Positions 1 through 64,000 of a stretch of DNA of 64,000 nucleotides are shown here, one piece after another (positions within the stretch are counted from its first letter, which is position 1; every line of letters begins with the position of its first letter). A program made the translations under genes and the position numbers. The notes under the pieces were generated by a model. That model saw only the letters and a program-made list of their open reading frames with translations, searched no databases and was not told the origin of the DNA. Origin of the DNA: Vitrella brassicaformis CCMP3155 (lineage: Eukaryota > Protista > Chromerida); contig CDMY01000401.1 in the NCBI GenBank assembly GCA_001179505.1, positions 1-64,000 of the forward strand. Direction: 5' to 3'.

Positions 1-197
1 CCACCCACCCACCCACAGACAGACAGCTCGACAGACAGACAGCTCGACAGATTGATAGATAGACAGATTGACTGACTGACAGACTGACTGACCCTTCTGG
101 CTTATGGGCTGTTTGGGGCCGGCTGTGTGGCTGCCTGCCTGCCCTGTCTGATGAGCTTAATGGAGGGGGTGGATGAACTCATCTATCGACAAGAAAG
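1..197. repeat. Left terminal inverted repeat (partial; continues upstream of base 1)
   Basis: Reverse complement of 5155-5351 (i+j=5352); 5 substitutions counted in 197 nt, no indels seen. Confidence 0.93.
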
Positions 198-2875
198 AAT
201 GTGTCTCTCTGGTCGAGGGGGACGAACATGTAGGGCACGGCAGACAGCATCACCACCGACTCAAACGACAGAAAGCCACTCGCGCGACAACACGACAGGA
301 CCCCTGCATATCCACCACACCCGACATGCCAGCAGAGAGGGATCTTCCTCGCAGTCACCCCCACCTTCCTGCCCTCATGCCAGTGCACCTTATCGATCAG
401 CAGCACGTGCCCCTCGTCCTCACGCAAACGCAGCATCCTTCCTGCCACCACATCCACACCCACACACTCTCTCTCACGCAGAAGTGGGGGGCACACCACA
501 GAGGCCGGCAAGCCCTGGAAATCCTCGCTGCAGGAAGACAGGGAGTAGGAGAAGCTGTGCAGAAATGAACGCAGCGTGTTGGCCCCCAGCTCTTTCCAGT
601 TGCCTGTCTTCACCCATCCCTTGACTGTCTGATGCATCATCTCACTTGGAAAGCACCATTGCTCACGCAGTGGACCGAACCTATACATGTCGAGGGGCAT
701 GTGCGTGTAGGCATGCAGTTTCGGTGGGGCGTAGTTGTACAGGTTGATGAATGAGTCAACGAACTGATCGATCTTCACGGCAAACCGCCGAAGGTCGCCG
801 ACAATGTCCACCTCCCTCTGCAGCACCATCCCGATGATCTCGCAATGCAGCTTGTAGCAGGCCAAGTGCTGTCGCCCGACCACGACGTCCTCCCCGTCTC
901 CCTCCGGCATGGTGGAGAAGAGGATGACGCGCACCACGGGGGCCAGGTACTGCAGCTTCTTGGCCGTGGCCTTGACCTGGTTGTCAGAGCTCCAGATAGC
1001 CGAGGCAGCCTGGGAGATGCGGTTCTTGCCCGACGCGTGAGTGTGACACAGACTCTTGACCGCCGCCATGAAGGTGGGCTTGGACAGCCACCCCGCCTCA
1101 CGCCACTCACGGATGACCCGATGCATGTGGTAGCGAAGCATGCCCTCCATGATGTTGTGCATCGGGTCGCCCATGACGAGATCGAGGATGCCTGATGCTC
1201 CGGGATCGGGCGGCGGGCTGTTGGGGGAAGGAGCGGGCGGCTGCCGGCAGTCGGGACAGATGAAGCGGAGACGGGAGTGGGCATTCTCCTCTGCGGAAGG
1301 AGTGATGCCCACACATACCTCGTGGAACCAATGTTCACTGAACGCAACACACACACACACACACACACACAGACAGACAGACAGACATACAGAGAGAGAG
1401 GAACAGGTATGAAAGATCGCTTCCCTGCCTTCTCTCCCTCCTGCTCACCACTTGCGGCATGACAGCATGTCCTTGCTGCCCTCTGGACATGAGCCATGGG
1501 CCACACCACCTCCGCAGACACCACACTGCTGCGAGTCCGATCGAGGCGCCGAGTAGGGCAGGAAACGCCATGGGGTCTCCCTCTTGACCCCCCTCTCCTT
1601 GACGAACTCATCCCTCTGTCCGGCCGGCATGCTCACGAGCGTGTCCACTCGTCTGTCGAATGCACCGCCTCCGATCAGCTCGTCATGTCGGACGATGTGC
1701 TGCCTGCCCACCACTCCCAGGTCGCGGCGGTGGAAGTCGCAGCCATAACAGCAGTGGTTGGCCGAGCCGAAGTGGTTGAGGCCCAGCAGCTCGGCGATGG
1801 CCACCATGTCCGCACAGTAGGTGAGCAGCGCCCCCTGAACCAGCATCGTCCTCATCCGTCCCTCCTCGGCGTCGTACACGTCCATCTCGATGCCCGCCCA
1901 GAGCATCCGCAGGAATTCGATGAGGCGGCTGCTGACGGCGTCCAGGCCGGCAGGCTTTCCGTGACCGGGGGAGGCGAGGTCGGCGCTCGCAAAGAGGATC
2001 ATCAGCTCATAGCGCATGGGGCTGGGGATGTTGTGCACGACGATGTAGACATTCTCTATCTTGATGGCACCGGCTCTGGTGGGGTTGGATGGAGTGAATC
2101 CGTCGTGCGTGAGGCCTAGGAAGATGGGCAGGCGAGGGAGGGAGGAGTCGGTGGCTGCGGCATGGTGATGGAAGTGGTGTTGTCGGTACACGGAGCCGCT
2201 GAACACATTCACCAAGCGCCGGCTGGGCCGGCCGCCCCCCTCTGGTGCGAACCGCCACGCCTCCATGACGTGTCGGTTGGCCACCAGCATCCGCAGCAGC
2301 ATCCCGAGATCGACGGTGTAGATGCGTATCCCTCTGCGCAGCTCGGCCGGCCTGGGCCTGATGATGTAGTTGTCGACCTTGTTGGGCGAGTGCCTCTCGA
2401 CGAATCGGCGCAGCGCACCATCCTTAGTCAGCCGGTCAGGCAGGAGGGGCTGCCCGAGGAAGGACACGCAGAGTGCGTTGGCGATGGCGAAGAATATTGC
2501 GATGAGGGTGAAGGGCAGGAAGTATCGCCATCGGAGAGCGATGATTGTATCGACGAGCTGCCGTTGAGCCGGACTGCCCTCGATTAAGACAGGGTGGGTG
2601 CCAGCAGAGGGAGTGGAGGGCTGAGGAGCCTCCTCAGCGTCAGAGCTCAGCTCGTTTCGGTCGTCTGGCGCCTCAGAGTCTGAGTCGGATGATGAGCTGT
2701 CGTCGCTAGCCTGGTCATGTCCCGGTCCGTGTTGAGCTCGGAAGACATGCTTCGCAGTGGTTTGATGCCGCTCCAGGTCCCAAAGCGACCGAAAGGGCTT
2801 ATTGCACACGTTGCACCAGAAGGCTGCTTCGTCCTCAGAGGTAGATTCGTCACTCAACGAGGGCGAGTGGCTCAT
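179..2875 (-). CDS. CACTA/CMC-type DDE transposase (TnpD-like), 2 exons (2875-1449, 1337-179), ~861 aa, with N-terminal C2H2 finger and internal PHD finger
   Basis: CMC signature in order: FLGLTHDGF (D1), LTYCADMVA (D2), CYGC (C2C), GDPMH (MH), HAYTH (H3H), FGPLREQWCFPSE (E). A GT-AG intron at 1448-1338 (gtgag...ttcag) joins TG|T in frame. C2H2 finger CNVCNKPFRSLWDLERHQTTAKH at ~2747-2815. Confidence 0.9.
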
Positions 2876-3149
2876 TACGCGCCTGAACAATGGAGAGAGA
2901 GAACCGTCAAATGAATGACAAATGTGATGTGTCAGTGCTTGAATTCTCTCATACCGTTGCTTGTGAACGACTGGTTGATCATCCTTTGAGTTGCTGCTGA
3001 TGTGAATTCATGGTTGCTTCTCGGCTGCGCGCTTGGATCGCTCACTCAAAAGTGAAGCAACGACTTTTTCTCTGCAGTGAAGCAACGACTCACCCTTCGC
3101 AGCATTTTGCTCGTTGTTTGTGACGTTTGAGTGACCTCTGACTGCCTCC

Positions 3150-5113
3150 ATGGATACGGAGGAGCGCGAGGGCGCCGCGGCACCCCCTGAGTCAATCGCC
3201 CGCACGGTGAAGGGGAGGCGTCAGGCAGCCAAGAAGAGCAGCGCGGCGATGGCGCGACTTCGCGTCGAGGAGCACCAGAAGAAGAAGAGCAAGGGCAGCA
3301 AACAGCAAGGCAAACAGCCCGCCGCAACCGGCGCGGCCTCCCAGGCCGCCACAGCAGACGCCGAGGGTGAGGGTGAGGGTGAGAGTGAGGGTGTGTGCGT
3401 GTGTGTGCGTGTGTGTGGTGCAGGAAGATGGATGAACTCAATACCTTTATGGCGTCGACGCTGGGCATGCCACGCGACGAGATCAAGCTGCTGATCGAGC
3501 AGAACGTGGCCCGTGCCATGCAGGGTGTCGCTGCTGCAGCACCAGGCGGCCACAACCCACCTGCGCCGGCAGCAGACAGCCCCCCGCGCCCCGCATTCGA
3601 CTACGCCGCCATTCGCGAGAGGCTCGAGAACTCCATCCAAGACCTCAGGAACACACTAAACGACACGACCAAGGGTGAGTGGATACAATCGGGAGACGGT
3701 GAGGTCACCGGTTGGGTGTCATATTCCTTTGATAGTGCGGACGATCGAGGCGTTGCAGAGGAGCCCCGGGGCGATAGCTGACCGTCTTCCCAAGCGCTGG
3801 CACGCAGCCAGGACCACACAGGAGTGCACGGGTACGTTTGTACGAGCCAAAAGATGACCACCCATGAATCAGTCATGTGTGGTGCGACATCTCTCATGGC
3901 CTGCAGGACCACTGATCCGCCATTACCTCTGCGTGCCGCGTTTCCTCGGTCCGTCGGTGGCCCTCGAGAAGGCGTGCGAGGCGCTGGAGAAAGAGCACGA
4001 CACTCGCGAGTGGGCCACGGCGATCAAACGGCTGAGGGAGCTCGACATTGAAACGGTGGGTGGAGTGGGGTTGGAACGGGAAGGGGGGATAATGCCTGCA
4101 CATCGCATTGCGTGTATGCGTGCGTGTATGTACTTGCAGGAGCTTGGGTTGATGGTGGAGGCGATGGAAGCCGGCGGCATGGTGCCGGCATCCCCTTCAG
4201 CAGCCGATTACATATCTACAATCAACAAGATGACTGCGACCAGCGGGGAGGAGACTGACAGCGAACACGCTCGGGAGCAGTACCCACCACTCTCCGAGTA
4301 CGAACTCTCCGCCCCCGAGTCGTTCCCCCGCCCCCTCAGGCGCGTGCCCGACGCCGCGCCCGCAACGACCAAGTACCAATCGATGCGGTTCGCACCCCCT
4401 GGTGAGGAGGACGGACCCGAATGGCTCTTCATCGCTGAAGGTTCGCGAGGCGGAAGAAAATTGGGCATCAGCAGATGACTTCCTGGCCTCTTGTGTGTCT
4501 CGTGGTGTCCGTCAGGACGGTATCGCAAGACTGGAGAGGGTGATGGCAGGGCTCTCGAGCCCAACGAGGGAGGAGAAGACAGCTACGTCGTCGTGTATGG
4601 AACTACACACGGCCCCCAGCTCTCGTTCAAAGAGTAAGACACTCACACACACGCATCCATAAACACACATGAATTAATGCTGTCCCTGTATGGTCAGGGC
4701 TGTTCTGCACCTGTTTGTGCTCTTCGTGCTCGCCCACTATGACGACACCTTCGAGGCTGACGCTATCTTTCTGGGTAAGGAACGGCAGCGAGGCAATGAC
4801 GAGCATACATTCGACACTTTGTCATGTTTTGCTCGATCCAGAGCGTCGTTTGTATCAGGTTGTTCGACTTCTTCAGCTTCGAGTGTTCGACGGCGTCATG
4901 GATGCGGGCATCCCGATGCTGCTGGGGCTCAAGCCGCCCGCCGGGGGCGGAGGGTCGCCGCTCGAGACCAGGGCCGGCCTGCTCGGATTCCGTACGGTGG
5001 CAGCGAAGCTCAAGTTCGAGGTCGACGTGCCCATCGCCGGTCTTGAGGACCTGCAGCGAGAGGCGGCGCGAATGGTCATGGGCGGCGAGGAGGATGGGGA
5101 CGAATTCGTTTGA
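3150..5113 (+). CDS. Transposon accessory gene (ORF2, TnpA-analogous position), 8 exons, no recognisable domain
   Basis: The ORF pieces MDTEERE..., KMDELNTF..., VRTIEALQR..., PLIRHYLCVP..., ELGLMVEAM..., GRYRKTGEG..., AVLHLFVLF... and ERRLYQVVR...DEFV* join through GT-AG introns with consistent phases. The gene lies between the TIRs. Confidence 0.75.
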
Positions 5114-5154: not shown

Positions 5155-5409
5155 CTTTCTTGTCGATAGATGACTTCATCCACCCCATCCATTCAGCTCA
5201 TCAAACAGGGCAGGCAGGCAGCCACACAGCCGGCCCCAAACAGCCCATGAGCCAGAAGGGTCAGTCAGTCTGTCAGTCAGTCAATCTGTCTATCTATCAA
5301 TCTGTCGAGCTGTCTGTCTGTCGAGCTGTCTGTCTGTGGGTGGGTGGGTGGGTGTGGAGGGATGGATGGATGGATGTGGGTGTGTGGCTTGCATTTGGGT
5401 AGAGTAGTG
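5155..5409. repeat. Right terminal inverted repeat (~255 bp) ending in TAGTG
   Basis: Matches the left repeat up to 5351. On the minus strand the terminus reads CACTACTCTACCCAAATGC. Confidence 0.85.
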
Positions 5410-5550
5410 GCGGGCGAAGGGCATTTTGATATCGCATATCCTTCTGGTCTGCCGCGGCCTCGTGTGTGTGTTGTGAATAGACGTCTGGTGTACATATGAC
5501 CTCTGAATTGACTCAAAAGTCGTCGGATCTCTTCATGTACATGTCTCAAA

Positions 5551-5633
5551 CAGAGAGAACTGGTGATGGACAGCAGAGAACTGGTGCTGGACAGCAGAGA
5601 ACTGGTGATTTACAGCAGAGAACTGGTTCTGGC
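5551..5633 (+). repeat. Tandem repeat, ~21-bp unit x4 (CAGCAGAGAACTGGTGxTxxA)
   Basis: Units start at 5551, 5571, 5592 and 5613. The core GAACTGGTTCTC recurs at ~5659-5670. Confidence 0.85.
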
Positions 5634-5775
5634 TGGAAAGGTCGGTTCTCGCGGTGTGGAACTGGTTCTCCCACCACGGAACGTCTGCCTTGCGCGACCA
5701 TCCCATCGAAACAATCCCCTTTCAACCGTCGTCCGTCGCCGTATATTGATATGTCTGTCTGGTCGATGCCTGCAG

Positions 5776-8152: not shown

Positions 8153-8452
8153 NNNNNNNNNNNNNNNNNNNNNNNNNNNNNNNNNNNNNNNNNNNNNNNN
8201 NNNNNNNNNNNNNNNNNNNNNNNNNNNNNNNNNNNNNNNNNNNNNNNNNNNNNNNNNNNNNNNNNNNNNNNNNNNNNNNNNNNNNNNNNNNNNNNNNNNN
8301 NNNNNNNNNNNNNNNNNNNNNNNNNNNNNNNNNNNNNNNNNNNNNNNNNNNNNNNNNNNNNNNNNNNNNNNNNNNNNNNNNNNNNNNNNNNNNNNNNNNN
8401 NNNNNNNNNNNNNNNNNNNNNNNNNNNNNNNNNNNNNNNNNNNNNNNNNNNN
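8153..8452. other. Assembly gap (300 N)
   Basis: Run of N. Confidence 1.
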
Positions 8453-61063: not shown

Positions 61064-64000
61064 TCACGTCTCGCCCGCACCACCCAAGAACCTGCAACAA
61101 AGGCGCCCATCGGACACACAGCACAGCACGGCCAGAGACACGACGGTCGTCCCCCTTGTCGTGCCAGTTTGTGTGTGTTTCTGGCTTCTTACCCCAGTGC
61201 GCTCTAGAGCGCTTTGATCTCCGCCTGCCTCTTGGCTGACCGCTCCTCCCATGTCATGATGCAGCAGCAACACACATCACACCAACACGCAGAGAGAGAG
61301 ACACATCGCTGCTGTCCATCTCTGCGTTCGTCAACTGAATGGCTGACCTCTGTCCTCGCACTGCAGCCGCAGGGCCTCCAGTGCCGCCGATGTGCTGTCG
61401 AATATTCCCCTCTCCTTGTCAAGCTCGTTGTCGGCCTTGATGATGGCCGAGGTGCACTCCTTGATCTCGTTGCGCCAATTGTCGATGTCCGTCTGGCGGC
61501 CGGCCATGTCTGCCAGCGTCTCCTTCCTGTACTCGACGAAATCTCTCTGCTCAGCTTCCTCCGCCTGCATATGGCGCACAGAGTCCTATCGTATGCAGTT
61601 TTTGTGGGTTCGTGCTGGCTGACGCGTTTGGTGTCTTTGTTTGTTTTGATGAAGTTGTCTCGGATTGTCTCGAGCACTTCGATGACGCTCGAGCCAGCAC
61701 CTTGGCTGCCTGAAGCACGAAGCACACAAAGGAGACATACATGTGTACGCAGCTGATGGTGACCCACCAACCAACCTGTGTATGGTTCGCTGAACAGGGA
61801 CTTGCAGTGTGAGGCGTCGACGCTCATGCCAAGTTGAGCCAGCACACCGGCCTGCAGGCACACATCACATGCACAGGTACAGTCTTTCTTTGCTCGCAGA
61901 CGTCTCTCTGTCAGTCACCTTTGCAGCTGTCTTGTAGAATTGGCTGAGCACGTCCATGGCCTCGTGCACAGCGTCGGCAGCCTTCCTGGCGTCTGAACAA
62001 GGGAAACAAGAGAGAGAGTTGACGGACGTTCTCTTTTGGTGTGTGCATGCGACGATCGCATGTGACCAGCGATCGTGTTTGCGTTTGTGACTCGGCTCTG
62101 GTTGCGCAGGTCAGCCGCCACAACCAGCGAAGTCTGAAAGCATTCCGGCGGATTGCATCGAGACATGAATGTTGGGGGNNNNNNNNNNNNNNNNNNNNNN
62201 NNNNNNNNNNNNNNNNNNNNNNNNNNNNNNNNNNNNNNNNNNNNNNNNNNNNNNNNNNNNNNNNNNNNNNNNNNNNNNNNNNNNNNNNNNNNNNNNNNNN
62301 NNNNNNNNNNNNNNNNNNNNNNNNNNNNNNNNNNNNNNNNNNNNNNNNNNNNNNNNNNNNNNNNNNNNNNNNNNNNNNNNNNNNNNNNNNNNNNNNNNNN
62401 NNNNNNNNNNNNNNNNNNNNNNNNNNNNNNNNNNNNNNNNNNNNNNNNNNNNNNNNNNNNNNNNNNNNNNNNNNNNNNTGGCTGCCCTGACGTTGAGGTG
62501 GGCGACTTGGTTGACGTTGTCGCTGATCATCTGCTGCAGCTGACCTCTGCGAGCGGTCTTCTCGTCGATGCTACACACACGAACAAACGGTCAGACACGC
62601 TGCACGAGGTCGTGGTGCGGTGCTGGCTGTGGTGATGGGAGCCGTGGCTCGGCCTGCATACAGTGCCTGCAGCTTGTCCATGTTTTCCTTGGCGAGCTCC
62701 ATGGCCTTGGTGTTGTCGGCGATGTTACTCTCGCAGTAGCCATTCTTCTCTGCCGCCTCGTTCGCTTGCTGCACACACAGAGAAGGCACAGCTTCCTCGT
62801 CTGTCTACGCAGGAGTCGGTACAGCACCTGCAGCATCTTCTGGATTAGGTCCTGGATGAGCTTCTTGACCTTGGCGAAGGGATCGCCGTCAATCCTAAAC
62901 ACGCAAACAGGGCAATGCATCCTTTAGTGTGTATCGTGTTCTCCCATCCATCCCTCCCTGCCTCCCTCCCTCCCTCCCTCCCTCAATTCTCCTTTACTTG
63001 ATGGCCAAGGAGTAGAGTGCGGTGCTGTTGAGCCGCTGCCCGGCGTGCATCAGCATCGACACAGCCTGCAGCAAAGCGACAGACATGCAGCATATATCCA
63101 CACAGGCGTGCAGTGCACCCCTTTCTCACCCTCTGTCTGTCATTTCCCGTCGACGGGCCTCTAGTTCTCAGCAGCCGCTGGATGAAGGAGACCATCCTGC
63201 CGCCTGCAGCACAGCATACAGACAGAGGGAGGGAAGCGACACAAGGCTTTCGCATCTCGAGTTGCCCACCCTACCCTTGGTGTGGTTGTGTCTCTGTATG
63301 AGTGTCTCGGTGTCAGTGATGGCCTCAACGCCGGTCGGCTGCTGCAAAGATGCAGGCAAGTTGACGCGCTCCAGGTCCTATACACCGCACACATAACATA
63401 AAAGACATGAGGGTGAGGGGGACGAGGTGGCTCCGTTGTCGCCATTCAGCTCAGTCCCCTCACCTGCACGGTTCCCTGCAGGATCGCCAGAGCCTTGGCG
63501 ATGGCCACCAACTCGTCAGCCCGTTACGTTGAAGGACAAGAACCAATACGTCGAGACAGACAGGCAAAAGCCGAGTCGCCGCACTCACCTCATCTGTGTG
63601 CGCTGCTCCCAGTCCTTGCCTTTGTCCTCACACTCGACCGTCAGGCTCCGCAGAGACTCGGTGTCTGAGCAACCCACGGGGAAGACCGACCCCCTATATG
63701 ACATATGATGCATGCGCGGCCGGCTGCATTCCCACCTTCATCGTGTGCCCGTTGCTCAGTGGCCAGGTTGCCTTTGGCGGTCTGCAGGTCACTCTCGGCA
63801 GTCGACTTTTCCTAGAGAGCATTCCATCGACGAGGAAGGTGACTAGGGGGCGTCGTGCCTTATCTGCCTCTCCCGTCATTCGCTTACTTGTGTTTTGGTC
63901 TGTGTGAGGCCCTGTTTCTCTGTGATCGAGCTCGTTAGCTCCGACTCGGCGCTGGTGAAGGTCTGCAGTACACACACATGGAAAGTGGCAGCAGGCAGGA
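61064..64000 (-). CDS. Alveolate-type long coiled-coil protein (5'-partial), with TAG at 61204-61206 just before the normal C-terminus
   Basis: CEDKGKDWEQRTQMR; SFIQ; LNSTALYSLA; DPFAKVKKLIQDLIQKM; EAAEKNGYCESNI; AMDVLSQFY; VIEVLETIRDNF; ALRLQCE...MTWEERSAKRQAEIKAL. Confidence 0.75.
62179..62478. other. Assembly gap (300 N) inside the coiled-coil gene
   Basis: Run of N. Confidence 1.

What the first reader, a model, noticed from the sequence alone, without database searches (positions are those of the whole stretch)
1247..1525. PHD finger embedded inside the catalytic core of a CACTA/CMC transposase
Seen in sequence: splicing 1448-1338 creates CGVCGGGVAHGSCPEGSKDMLSCRKCEHWFHEVCVGITPSAEENAHSRLRFICPDC. 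This is a complete C4HC3 PHD finger, invisible in the ORF track because the intron splits the fourth Cys codon (TG|T). It lies between the CYGC and DPMH motifs, i.e. in the insertion region between the second D and the E of the DDE triad. Established: PHD fingers read histone H3 tails, and the Met of 'MxxC' and the Trp of 'WFH' are aromatic-cage positions in ING-type H3K4me3 readers. Both are present here, though the N-terminal cage Tyr is not. RAG2 uses a PHD finger to target the RAG1 transposase-derived nuclease. Inference: this transposase may carry its own chromatin reader for target-site choice, a single-polypeptide parallel to RAG1/RAG2 in a protist.
Basis: partly seen in the sequence, partly recalled or inferred. 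Interest (0 to 1): 0.82.

Follow-up and report, generated by a model that had tools for sequence, protein, structure and literature searches.

The report
PHD finger inside a RAG1-like transposase
A low-copy CACTA/EnSpm-type "jumping gene" enzyme of the alga Vitrella brassicaformis really does carry a histone-reader-type PHD zinc finger inserted in the middle of its RAG1-like catalytic region. This placement has not been described for this transposon superfamily, and whether the finger reads chromatin is untested.

Summary
On the minus strand a canonical GT-AG intron (1448..1338, 111 nt) joins TG|T into a Cys codon. This gives a complete C4HC3 PHD finger (residues 451-506 of an 861-aa protein). 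It scores 31-40 bits on Pfam PF00628, against a cut-off of 24. The public Vitrella brassicaformis gene model uses the same junction. A paralogous mRNA reads without interruption through a PHD at the same position.

The host protein gives no direct Pfam transposase hit, but three results place it in the family:
- Profile-profile comparison with Transposase_21 (tnp2/CACTA) proteins gives 99.4% probability.
- D258, D356, E708 and the C(2)C, D(2)H and H(3)H motifs are all intact.
- An AlphaFold model matches RAG1 as the top 38 PDB hits.

The PHD is a lineage-specific insertion between C(2)C and D(2)H. Among 24 relatives scanned, only the two Vitrella sequences have it.

By sequence it is closest to H3K4me3 readers (DIDO1, KDM5B, BPTF), and the Trp and Met cage positions are present. 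The paralog has Ser in place of that Trp, and the N-terminal aromatic is missing.

Chromatin-guided transposition is therefore plausible but unproven. PHD fingers are already known in other transposase superfamilies, so this is a new variant of a known kind.

The parts
1449..2875 (-). Transposase CDS, exon 1 (Met1 to the first two bases of the Cys476 codon). Contains the C2H2 finger, D258, D356, C(2)C and the first half of the PHD.
   Evidence: Open frame from ATG 2875. Identical to the N-terminus of public model P0001.
1338..1448 (-). 111-nt GT-AG intron (GTGAGC...TTGCGTTCAG), rich in (GT)n/(GTCT)n microsatellite. It is in frame, with a single stop at 1447-1445.
   Evidence: The same junction is used in P0001. 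The 3' end of the intron is similar in the environmental fragment L006.
179..1337 (-). Transposase CDS, exon 2 (third base of the Cys476 codon to the stop at 181-179). Contains the second half of the PHD, D(2)H, H(3)H, E708 and the C-terminal domain.
   Evidence: The whole exon is colinear with paralog mRNA L007/P0010 and with P0003.
1247..1525 (-). PHD finger, residues 451-506. Ligands are C451, C454, C473, C476, H481, C484, C503 and C506. Met470 and Trp479 sit at reader-cage positions. The intron interrupts the finger.
   Evidence: PF00628 at 31.3 and 39.7 bits against a cut-off of 24. Closest PDB sequences are DIDO1, KDM5B PHD3, BPTF, Pps and KDM5A PHD3. Coordinates.
2747..2821 (-). N-terminal C2H2-type zinc finger (residues 19-43, FWCNVCNKPFRSLWDLERHQTTAKH). 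It is a candidate DNA-binding domain.
   Evidence: Weak Pfam zf-C2H2 hit, E 0.0077, below the cut-off. Beta-beta-alpha in the model at pLDDT about 75. Similar N-terminal fingers in distant relatives P0011 and P0031.
2102..2104 (-). Catalytic D258 (LGLTHDGF), first D of the DDE triad.
   Evidence: Aligns with DWF/DDF/DGF of Transposase_21-positive relatives. Residue position; codon coordinates derived from the mapping.
1808..1810 (-). Catalytic D356 (TYCADMVA), second D.
   Evidence: Aligns with CDIPA/SDLPA/ADTPA.
1739..1750 (-). C(2)C motif, C376-Y-G-C379.
   Evidence: Aligns with GCSKC/CRFC of relatives. Defining CMC/Transib/RAG1 motif according to PMC12730594.
1157..1168 (-). D(2)H motif, D533-P-M-H536.
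   Evidence: Aligns with DPMHN/DVMHD of all relatives. Codon coordinates derived from the mapping.
701..715 (-). H(3)H motif, H684-A-Y-T-H688.
   Evidence: Aligns with PKxHxxxH of relatives. Motif definition in PMC12730594. Codon coordinates derived from the mapping.
641..643 (-). Catalytic E708 (WCFPSEMMHQTVKGW).
   Evidence: Aligns with WCxxFE(A/R) of relatives, including plant CACTA WMYPFER. Retained in paralog mRNA L007/P0010 and in P0003. Codon coordinates derived from the mapping.
1..197 (.). Left arm of a long inverted repeat. It contains the last 6 codons and the stop of the transposase plus its 3' flank. It is cut by the end of the contig.
   Evidence: 192 of 197 positions are complementary to 5155-5351. 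Window position 1 is the end of contig CDMY01000401.1.
5155..5351 (.). Right arm of the inverted repeat. It starts 42 nt after the stop of the second gene. It is a candidate terminal or subterminal repeat.
3150..5113 (+). Second, divergently transcribed gene inside the repeat-bounded unit (public model 434 aa, several introns). No recognisable domain.
   Evidence: Gene call and the absence of any Pfam hit. Sequence. No similarity next to paralog L002.
5550..5670 (+). 21-nt tandem repeat (ACAGCAGAGAACTGGTGATGG, 3.8 copies) plus one further GAACTGGT copy. It may be a subterminal binding-site array.
   Evidence: GAACTGGT occurs 5 times in 64 kb, all within this stretch. The 3' UTR of paralog L007 carries TGGAAAACTGG six times at about 20-nt spacing.

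Best explanation
Shown: window 179-2875 (minus strand) encodes an intact 861-aa DDE transposase of the CMC (CACTA/EnSpm-Mirage-Chapaev) superfamily with a RAG1-like fold. From N to C it has:
- a C2H2 finger;
- an RNase-H-like core with D258 and D356;
- the zinc module C(2)C...H(3)H;
- E708;
- a C-terminal domain.

A canonical PHD finger of about 80 residues has been inserted, in the Vitrella lineage only, into the loop between the conserved 'GV+...LPY' block and the D(2)H motif. This lies inside the insertion domain that separates the second D from the E. The gene sits with a second gene of unknown function between inverted repeats of at least 197 nt, which looks like a low-copy transposon.

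[quoted passage not shown] In this copy it probably prefers methylated K4, because Trp479 and Met470 occupy the cage positions of the DIDO1/BPTF/ING type. It would tether or activate the transposase on nucleosomes of a particular chromatin state and so bias where the element is cut or inserted. Functionally this would be a cis version of what the RAG2 PHD does for RAG1.
For: PHD:
- Pfam score above the cut-off.
- All eight ligands present, with spacing matched by the paralog.
- The same junction in the public model.
- A PHD conserved at the same place in an expressed paralog (L007/P0004) and in an environmental fragment (L006).

Family:
- phmmer hits to proteins that pass PF02992.
- hhalign 99.4%, E 3.4e-21, over 403 columns, with the PHD as an unaligned insertion.
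- DDE, C(2)C, D(2)H and H(3)H all aligned.
- The model (pLDDT 71, pTM 0.69) has RAG1 as its top 38 PDB matches over about 680 columns.

Reader type:
- The best PDB sequence matches are all H3K4me3-binding PHDs, and M-x-x-C and W-F-H align with theirs.

Insertion tolerated:
- The paralog sequence carrying the PHD (L007) keeps D(2)H, H(3)H and E; a separate paralog fragment, P0003, also keeps H(3)H and E but starts downstream of the PHD position.

Element-like context:
- An inverted repeat with 192 of 197 positions paired, including the end of the ORF.
- The contig breaks inside it.
- Tandem 21-mers beyond it, resembling those in the paralog's 3' UTR.
Against: - There is no binding or transposition data of any kind.
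- The cage Trp is Ser in the paralog, and the aromatic that precedes Cys1 in ING2 and BPTF is Gln here.
- Loop 1 is 8 residues longer than in the paralog.
- The model does not fold residues 442-523 (pLDDT below 50).
- There is no direct RNA evidence for this junction.
- The element ends, TSD and copy number are unknown.
- The gene was not flagged as a TE in the genome paper's annotation, and class II TEs total only 0.17 Mb in Vitrella. It may therefore be immobile or domesticated.
- A PHD-like finger in piggyBac binds DNA rather than histones (PMC8086355).
Confidence: 0.5

Rival explanations
1. The gene is a domesticated, immobile transposase-derived host gene. The PHD would then serve a host chromatin function (for example recruiting a RAG1-like nuclease or DNA-binding protein to marked chromatin), not transposon targeting.
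For: - Only one intact copy was found. The other family members are 33-45% identical paralogs rather than near-identical copies.
- Several paralogs are transcribed (MMETSP and Logan contigs).
- The gene was kept in the protein-coding set, and DNA transposons are nearly absent from Vitrella (0.17 Mb).
- The Chromera relative P0007 also exists as a single annotated gene.
Against: - A long inverted repeat (192 of 197 positions paired) brackets the gene and overlaps the end of its ORF.
- The contig breaks in that repeat, as expected of repeated DNA.
- Decayed copies exist (L002 frameshifted and truncated; L006, L008 and L009 with stops).
- The catalytic residues are intact, which both readings allow.
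Confidence: 0.25
2. The PHD-type cross-brace finger binds DNA, recognising the element's own terminal or subterminal repeats as the PHD-like C-terminal domain of piggyBac transposase does. It would not be a histone reader.
For: - The piggyBac CRD adopts a PHD-like fold and binds a repeated motif at the transposon ends (PMC8086355).
- Repeated 21-mers lie next to the inverted repeat here, and similar ones lie in the paralog's 3' UTR.
- The cage Trp is not conserved in the paralog.
Against: - By sequence the finger groups with bona fide histone readers, not with the piggyBac CRD, and it passes the Pfam PHD threshold.
- The protein already has an N-terminal C2H2 finger as a DNA-binding candidate.
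Confidence: 0.12
3. The PHD is a passenger. It would be an exon captured from a host gene that is tolerated in a surface loop and acts only as a structural zinc module or a protein-protein adaptor, with no role in chromatin targeting.
For: - The insertion is restricted to the Vitrella lineage (2 of 24 relatives); the Chromera homologue lacks it.
- An intron lies inside the domain.
- The model gives low confidence there.
Against: - All eight zinc ligands and the spacing are kept between paralogs that are only about 40% identical overall. This argues for selection on the domain.
- The M-x-x-C position is conserved in the window copy and the paralog, and a Met lies in the corresponding loop of the frame-disrupted fragment L006.
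Confidence: 0.1
4. The PHD is an artefact of gene modelling. The true mRNA would use another splice, or none, and would not encode the PHD.
For: - No RNA read across this junction was retrieved.
- The public model of the same gene contains at least one doubtful intron (442-645, which removes E708).
Against: - Retaining the intron stops translation at once, at 1447-1445.
- The chosen sites are the strongest consensus pair listed and restore the exact paralog spacing.
- A paralog cDNA encodes the PHD contiguously.
- The score of 39.7 bits cannot arise by chance from a wrong splice.
Confidence: 0.03

Closest known systems
CACTA/EnSpm (CMC superfamily) transposases, Pfam Transposase_21 (tnp2)
   Same: - DDE triad, C(2)C, D(2)H and H(3)H motifs in the same order.
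- The 'GV+..LPY' block and W-x-x-x-F/S-E around the catalytic Glu.
- hhalign 99.4%.
   Different: - No direct Pfam hit; it is a very divergent alveolate branch.
- It carries a PHD between C(2)C and D(2)H that none of the other relatives scanned has.
- The two genes are divergently transcribed, whereas (from memory) En/Spm uses one alternatively spliced transcript.
- CACTA termini and a 3-bp TSD could not be checked.
RAG1-RAG2 V(D)J recombinase (and its ancestor, Transib/ProtoRAG)
   Same: - The model's best structural matches are RAG1 chains.
[quoted passage not shown]
- Spacing is similar. D2 to C(2)C is 20 residues here against 19 in RAG1, and the last His to E is 20 against 20. The RAG1 residue numbers are recalled from memory.
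- A PHD of the H3K4me3-reader type is associated with the nuclease.
   Different: - In RAG the PHD belongs to a separate protein, RAG2 (from memory: a kelch propeller with a C-terminal PHD); here it is in cis, inside the catalytic polypeptide.
- Binding to H3K4me3 and stimulation of catalysis are demonstrated for RAG2 and untested here.
- No homology between the two PHDs beyond the family level was shown.
- Direct similarity to Transib is weak (E 0.14).
Rehavkus elements and some Mutator transposases, and Ginger1 transposases with PHD fingers
   Same: Cut-and-paste DDE transposases that carry a PHD finger as an accessory domain (PMC6446971; PMC2836005).
   Different: - They belong to different superfamilies (Mutator-like and integrase-like).
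- In Ginger1 the PHD is an extra C-terminal domain next to Ulp1, and the position within the Rehavkus transposase is not stated in what I read. None is described as inserted between the catalytic D and E.
- No function is reported in the passages I read.
piggyBac transposase C-terminal cysteine-rich domain, and the PiggyMac CRD
   Same: A cross-brace zinc finger within a DDE transposase. The PiggyMac CRD contacts the histone H3 N-terminus (PMC8086355).
   Different: - The piggyBac CRD binds transposon-end DNA.
- The PiggyMac CRD is not a canonical PHD and binds H3 weakly, regardless of methylation.
- Both are C-terminal.
- The Vitrella finger is a canonical Pfam PHD and is internal.
PHD and chromodomain accessory domains of retrotransposons (Chlamydomonas Gypsy-7a_cRei and other Chlamydomonas TEs)
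   Same: A TE-encoded chromatin-reader-type domain proposed to steer insertion away from harmful sites (bioRxiv 10.1101/2022.06.16.496473).
   Different: - In the example cited it is a retrotransposon Gag-Pol polyprotein.
- The enzyme, the lineage (green algae) and the domain position are all different.

Membership tests
CMC (CACTA/EnSpm-Mirage-Chapaev) DDE transposases | Alignable catalytic D, D, E triad on an RNase-H-like core | tested here: met
   D258, D356 and E708 align with the triad columns of 11 distant relatives, including a plant CACTA protein, and in hhalign.
CMC (CACTA/EnSpm-Mirage-Chapaev) DDE transposases | [quoted passage not shown] | tested here: met
   C376-x2-C379 and H684-x3-H688 are present and aligned.
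CMC (CACTA/EnSpm-Mirage-Chapaev) DDE transposases | Direct match to Pfam Transposase_21 (PF02992) above the gathering score | tested here: not met
   No transposase family was reported, even at E <= 1.
CMC (CACTA/EnSpm-Mirage-Chapaev) DDE transposases | Significant homology to proteins that do pass PF02992 | tested here: met
   - phmmer E 2.7e-7 to 2e-5 against P0008, P0012 and P0014, which score 47-79 bits on PF02992.
- Profile-profile probability 99.4%, E 3.4e-21.
CMC (CACTA/EnSpm-Mirage-Chapaev) DDE transposases | Terminal inverted repeats ending 5'-CAC(TA)...GTG-3' with 2-3 bp target-site duplications | not testable with these tools
   An inverted repeat of at least 197 nt exists, but its left arm runs off the contig. 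No second full copy or empty site was available, so the termini and TSD are unknown.
CMC (CACTA/EnSpm-Mirage-Chapaev) DDE transposases | RAG1/Transib-like three-dimensional fold | tested here: met
   A model with pTM 0.69 has RAG1 chains as its 38 best PDB matches, E down to 2e-7 over about 680 columns. HzTransib follows weakly.
PHD finger (Pfam PF00628) | Cys4-His-Cys3 ligand pattern with canonical spacing | tested here: met
   C451, C454, C473, C476, H481, C484, C503, C506. The same pattern occurs in paralog P0004.
PHD finger (Pfam PF00628) | Score above the curated Pfam threshold | tested here: met
   31.3-31.6 bits in the protein and 39.7 bits for the domain alone, against a cut-off of 24.
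PHD finger (Pfam PF00628) | Cross-brace two-zinc fold | tested here: inconclusive
   AlphaFold gave pLDDT below 50 for residues 442-523, with only two aligned sequences there and no zinc in the model.
H3K4me3-reading PHD subgroup (ING2, BPTF, DIDO1, TAF3, KDM5 type) | Cage residues: an invariant Trp two residues before the ligand His, plus an aromatic or Met three residues before Cys3 and an aromatic before Cys1 | tested here: inconclusive
   - Trp479 and Met470 are present and align with DIDO1 and BPTF.
- The residue before Cys1 is Gln.
- The paralog has Ser at the Trp position.
- The cage assignment in ING2 and BPTF is recalled from the literature, not tested here.
H3K4me3-reading PHD subgroup (ING2, BPTF, DIDO1, TAF3, KDM5 type) | Measured binding to H3K4me3 peptides | not testable with these tools
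   This needs peptide arrays, ITC or NMR.
RAG-type recombinase (RAG1 nuclease guided by the RAG2 PHD) | The PHD is supplied by a separate RAG2-like kelch-repeat partner | tested here: not met
   The PHD is in the same polypeptide as the catalytic core. The neighbouring gene has no kelch or PHD hit. The Vitrella protein may work like RAG, but it is not a member of this system.
Kyakuja-Dileera-Zisupton (KDZ) transposases (considered as an alternative) | Match to KDZ models or relatives | tested here: not met
   No KDZ family was hit by the protein or by any of the 24 relatives; the hits are Transposase_21, DUF4218 and, weakly, Plavaka.

The most novel reading that the evidence does not exclude
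A RAG1-fold cut-and-paste transposase has independently acquired, in cis and inside its zinc-binding insertion domain, an H3K4me3-reading PHD finger that gates catalysis or target capture on active-promoter nucleosomes. This would be a one-polypeptide, convergent counterpart of the RAG1/RAG2 arrangement in an alveolate alga. It would show that coupling RAG1-like nucleases to a histone mark is a recurrent evolutionary solution, not a vertebrate peculiarity.
Probability: 0.2. Interest if true: 0.8.

Novelty: new variant of a known kind. Interest (0 to 1): 0.55.

Why it matters
How DNA transposons choose targets in chromatin is known mechanistically for only a few systems. The clearest case of a histone mark controlling a transposase-derived nuclease is RAG2-PHD/H3K4me3 acting on RAG1.

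Here an enzyme of the same structural class carries a reader-type PHD in the same polypeptide, at a defined loop of the catalytic region. If the finger binds H3 tails, three things follow:
- It gives a compact natural model for testing how a histone mark can be wired into a DDE active site.
- It is a possible example of convergent evolution with V(D)J recombination.
- It is a candidate scaffold for chromatin-state-directed integration tools.

If the gene proves to be domesticated, it would instead be a new chromatin-associated, nuclease-like gene family in the closest photosynthetic relatives of apicomplexans.

On either reading it adds the CMC superfamily to the list of transposases that have recruited PHD fingers, and it corrects a public gene model that splices out the catalytic glutamate.

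Tried and rejected
- Direct Pfam search for a transposase domain gave nothing, even at E <= 1. Membership had to be shown through relatives and profiles.
- All three word-indexed protein searches returned essentially only the query or its two Vitrella/environmental relatives. Low-complexity words probably swamped the first two.
- Single-sequence AlphaFold was useless (pLDDT 34). The alignment-based model is good for the core but not for the PHD.
- RNA evidence for the junction:
  - an exact 27-nt exon-exon search of the JGI metagenome and transcriptome contigs found nothing;
  - look-ups of the unspliced ORFs found no other contigs;
  - the spliced protein was not accepted by the look-up or HMMER tools.
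- The search for related loci with the broad alignment had no stretch conserved enough. With the narrower one it gave only two decayed environmental fragments covering the H(3)H-E region, which say nothing about the PHD.
- The paralog locus L002 turned out to be truncated and frameshifted just before the PHD position. It has no similarity to the second gene or to the inverted repeat, so it could not define the element ends.
- The sources of the nearest stand-alone PHD proteins are anonymous metagenome contigs, so the donor of the PHD could not be traced.
- Rfam found nothing in the window.
- KDZ and Plavaka were considered and set aside.
- Literature searches for a PHD in CACTA/EnSpm transposases found none. 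This is absence from the open-access library only.
Full report
**Origin and gene structure**

The window starts at the end of contig CDMY01000401.1 (85,949 bp) of Vitrella brassicaformis CCMP3155, a free-living chromerid alga. One reading frame on the minus strand runs from ATG 2875 to the stop at 181-179. It is interrupted by a single in-frame stop, TGA at 1447-1445.

That stop overlaps a consensus donor (AAG TG|GTGAGC). An acceptor (TTGCGTTCAG|T GAA CAT TGG) lies 111 nt downstream, after a (GT)n/(GTCT)n tract. Removing 1448..1338 joins TG and T into Cys476 and gives an 861-aa protein containing CGVCGGGVAHGSCPEGSKDMLSCRKCEHWFHEVCVGITPSAEENAHSRLRFICPDC.

**Is the PHD real?**

- Pfam PF00628 scores 31.3 bits in the full protein and 39.7 bits (E 4.8e-10) for the 68-residue segment, against a cut-off of 24.
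- All eight ligands are present: C451, C454, C473, C476, H481, C484, C503, C506.
- The public model P0001 ('unnamed protein product, partial') uses the same junction and has PF00628 precomputed.
- A transcript contig, L007, encodes a 42%-identical paralog (proteins P0004 and P0010). It reads without interruption through ...TPWREMPFTLPVADSEHCGVC-x10-CSKCFHSFHRAC-x18-CPPC...GDVMHNVLEG, with no indel at our junction. P0004 itself passes the Pfam PHD threshold.
- A 589-nt environmental scaffold, L006, shows the same order: C(2)C, the GI+RTPW block, CHIC..., a short intron whose 3' end resembles ours, then FHEVC...CPQC. Its frame is disrupted.
- I could not get RNA reads for this exact junction.

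**What is the host protein?**

Pfam gives no transposase hit, and the word-indexed searches found only the protein itself. A full HMMER scan of 1.84 billion representatives found 46 hits, of three kinds:
- Close Vitrella or environmental paralog fragments: P0002, P0003, P0004, P0005, P0010.
- A Chromera homologue, P0007.
- Proteins of about 800 aa from fungi, animals and plants at 27-30% identity.

Of the ten hits scanned first, three (P0008, P0012, P0014) pass PF02992 'Transposase family tnp2'. The later scan of 24 relatives finds Transposase_21 in eight and DUF4218 in two. P0030 has the sequence hallmarks of a plant CACTA protein (LGLCIDGFNPF, WMYPFER).

In the multiple alignment the Vitrella protein has every landmark:

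| Landmark | Residues |
|---|---|
| First D | D258 (LGLTHDGF) |
| Second D | D356 (CADM) |
| C(2)C | C376/C379 |
| Conserved 'GV+' block | ERGVKRETPWRFLPY |
| D(2)H | D533..H536 |
| H(3)H | H684..H688 |
| Catalytic E | E708 (WCFPSEMM) |

Profile-profile comparison of the Vitrella family with the PF02992-positive set gives 99.4% probability, E 3.4e-21, over 403 columns. [quoted passage not shown]

An AlphaFold model built on a 24-sequence alignment (pLDDT 71, pTM 0.69, core blocks 84-98) has mouse RAG1 chains as its 38 best PDB matches. E goes down to 2e-7 over about 680 aligned columns. HzTransib follows weakly.

The label 'CMC transposase' therefore holds at superfamily level. The name 'CACTA' in the strict sense (termini, TSD) is untested.

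**Where the PHD sits**

In both the multiple alignment and hhalign, residues of about 446-523 have no counterpart in any distant relative. The block 'GV+...LPY' is normally followed within about 10 residues by D(2)H. Among the 24 relatives scanned, only the two Vitrella sequences carry a PHD. The Chromera homologue goes from ...TGVQRPSPWSQL straight to FDLMH.

The model leaves residues 442-523 unfolded (pLDDT below 50) between confident helices. This fits a separate module on a loop, but it gives no structural proof of the fold.

**What kind of PHD?**

The nearest solved structures by sequence are DIDO1/DATF1, KDM5B PHD3, BPTF, Drosophila Pps, KDM5A PHD3, PHF8, CFP1, Alfin-like, PHF2, TAF3 and ING2. 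From general knowledge these are nearly all H3K4me3 readers. HMMER aligns our DMLSCRKCEHWFHEVCVGI with DIDO1 FMICCDRCEEWFHGDCVGI and BPTF FYIGCDRCQNWYHGRCVGI. Met470 and Trp479 therefore sit where those proteins have cage residues.

Four points argue against a simple reading:
- The residue before Cys1 is Gln, not aromatic.
- Loop 1 is 8 residues longer than in the paralog.
- The paralog has Ser where we have Trp (CFHSFH).
- No fold or binding data exist.

I put H3-tail binding at about even odds, and K4me3 specificity lower.

**Transposon or domesticated gene?**

For an element:
- An inverted repeat with 192 of 197 positions paired lies at 1-197 and 5155-5351. Its left arm contains the last six codons and the stop of the transposase, and it is cut by the contig end.
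- Inside the repeat lie the transposase and a divergently transcribed second gene with no recognisable domain (3150-5113).
- Just outside the visible right arm lies a 21-nt tandem array with core GAACTGGT. All five copies of that core in the 64-kb window are within this stretch. The paralog's 3' UTR carries TGGAAAACTGG six times at about 20-nt spacing.
- Decayed copies exist.

For domestication or immobility:
- No near-identical copies were found.
- The paralogs are only 33-45% identical, yet transcribed.
- The gene was kept in the protein-coding set.
- Class II elements total only 0.17 Mb in Vitrella (PMC4501334 and its supplement).

The ends, TSD and copy number cannot be settled with the data in reach.

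**Mechanism proposed**

Shown: an intact RAG1-fold DDE enzyme carries an in-cis canonical PHD, and a paralog sequence (L007) that is only about 40% identical keeps the zinc ligands, D(2)H, H(3)H and the catalytic Glu.

Inferred: the PHD docks on an H3 tail and tethers or activates the enzyme on nucleosomes of a given state, biasing excision or integration.

Rivals are DNA-end binding as in the piggyBac CRD (PMC8086355), a host function after domestication, a passenger or adaptor role, or (very unlikely) a modelling artefact.

**Comparison and novelty**

PHD fingers in transposases are not new. They are described in:
- Rehavkus elements and some Mutator transposases (PMC6446971, PMC2836005);
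- Ginger1 (PMC2836005);
- several Chlamydomonas TEs, with the idea of chromatin-guided insertion already voiced (bioRxiv 10.1101/2022.06.16.496473);
- piggyBac, whose CRD is PHD-like.

I found no description of a PHD in CACTA/EnSpm/CMC transposases, nor of one placed between the catalytic D and E. This is a new variant of a known kind. Its interest lies in the RAG1-like fold of the host enzyme combined with a reader-type PHD, which makes the RAG1/RAG2 analogy concrete and testable.

**Correction to the public model**

P0001 removes 645..442 (204 nt, in frame). That deletes E708 and the conserved HQTVKGWVKTGN block. The paralog mRNA and P0003 keep this segment, so this intron is probably a mis-call or an alternative isoform lacking the catalytic Glu.

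Noticed in passing
window 442-645 (minus strand): The public gene model P0001 splices out a 204-nt in-frame segment (donor GTGAGA at 645, acceptor at 442). That segment encodes the catalytic E708 and the conserved HQTVKGWVKTGN block. Paralog mRNA L007/P0010 and P0003 keep the homologous segment as coding sequence. This is either a mis-annotated intron or an isoform without the catalytic Glu.
   Followed up: partly
window 1-197 and 5155-5351: A long inverted repeat (5 mismatches in 197 nt) brackets the transposase and a second gene. Its inner edge is sharp, and the left arm contains the transposase stop codon and is cut by the end of the contig. It could be the terminal inverted repeat of a transposon of more than 5.3 kb; the true termini are not visible.
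   Followed up: partly
window 5550-5670; L007 about 1750-1900: A 21-nt tandem repeat with core GAACTGGT lies about 200 nt outside the visible right repeat arm; all five copies of the core in the 64-kb window are here. The 3' UTR of the paralogous transcript has TGGAAAACTGG six times at about 20-nt spacing, plus an inverted copy. These may be subterminal transposase-binding sites.
   Followed up: partly
window 3150-5113 (plus strand): A second gene, transcribed divergently from the transposase (public model 434 aa, several short GT-rich introns), has no Pfam domain. No homologous sequence lies next to the paralog locus L002. Whether it is a transposon accessory gene is unknown.
   Followed up: partly
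window 3051-3102: A 25-nt direct repeat (AGTGAAGCAACGACT...), 2.1 copies, lies in the 275-nt region between the two divergent start codons. It may be a promoter or regulatory element.
   Followed up: no
window 1338-1448: The PHD-splitting intron is a multiple of three in length, and its only in-frame stop is the TGA overlapping the donor site. Retaining the intron would give a protein ending in ...CRKW that lacks D(2)H, H(3)H and E.
   Followed up: yes
L002 10001-12321 (contig CDMY01000701.1): Paralog P0002 (43% identical) is truncated and frameshifted just at the 'GV+..TPW' block, before the PHD position, and it also lies near a contig end. It nevertheless appears on 1.4-1.6-kb Logan contigs from three sequencing runs (ERR558151, ERR558152, ERR558200), which may be transcripts.
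   Followed up: partly
L006 1-589 (ENA metagenome scaffold CHAS20-1): An environmental fragment carries the same C(2)C, GI+RTPW, CHIC...FHEVC...CPQC order, with a short intron at the homologous place, but its reading frame is disrupted. Relatives of this PHD-bearing family therefore exist outside the sequenced strain.
   Followed up: partly
protein residues 356-379 and 688-708: The spacing of the second D to C(2)C (20 residues) and of the last His of H(3)H to the catalytic E (20 residues) is almost the same as in mouse RAG1. There D708 to C727 is 19 and H942 to E962 is 20; the RAG1 numbers are recalled from memory.
   Followed up: no
window 8153-8452 and 62179-62478: Two scaffold gaps of 300 N each. 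About 2.8 kb between the right repeat arm and the first gap carries no annotated gene.
   Followed up: no
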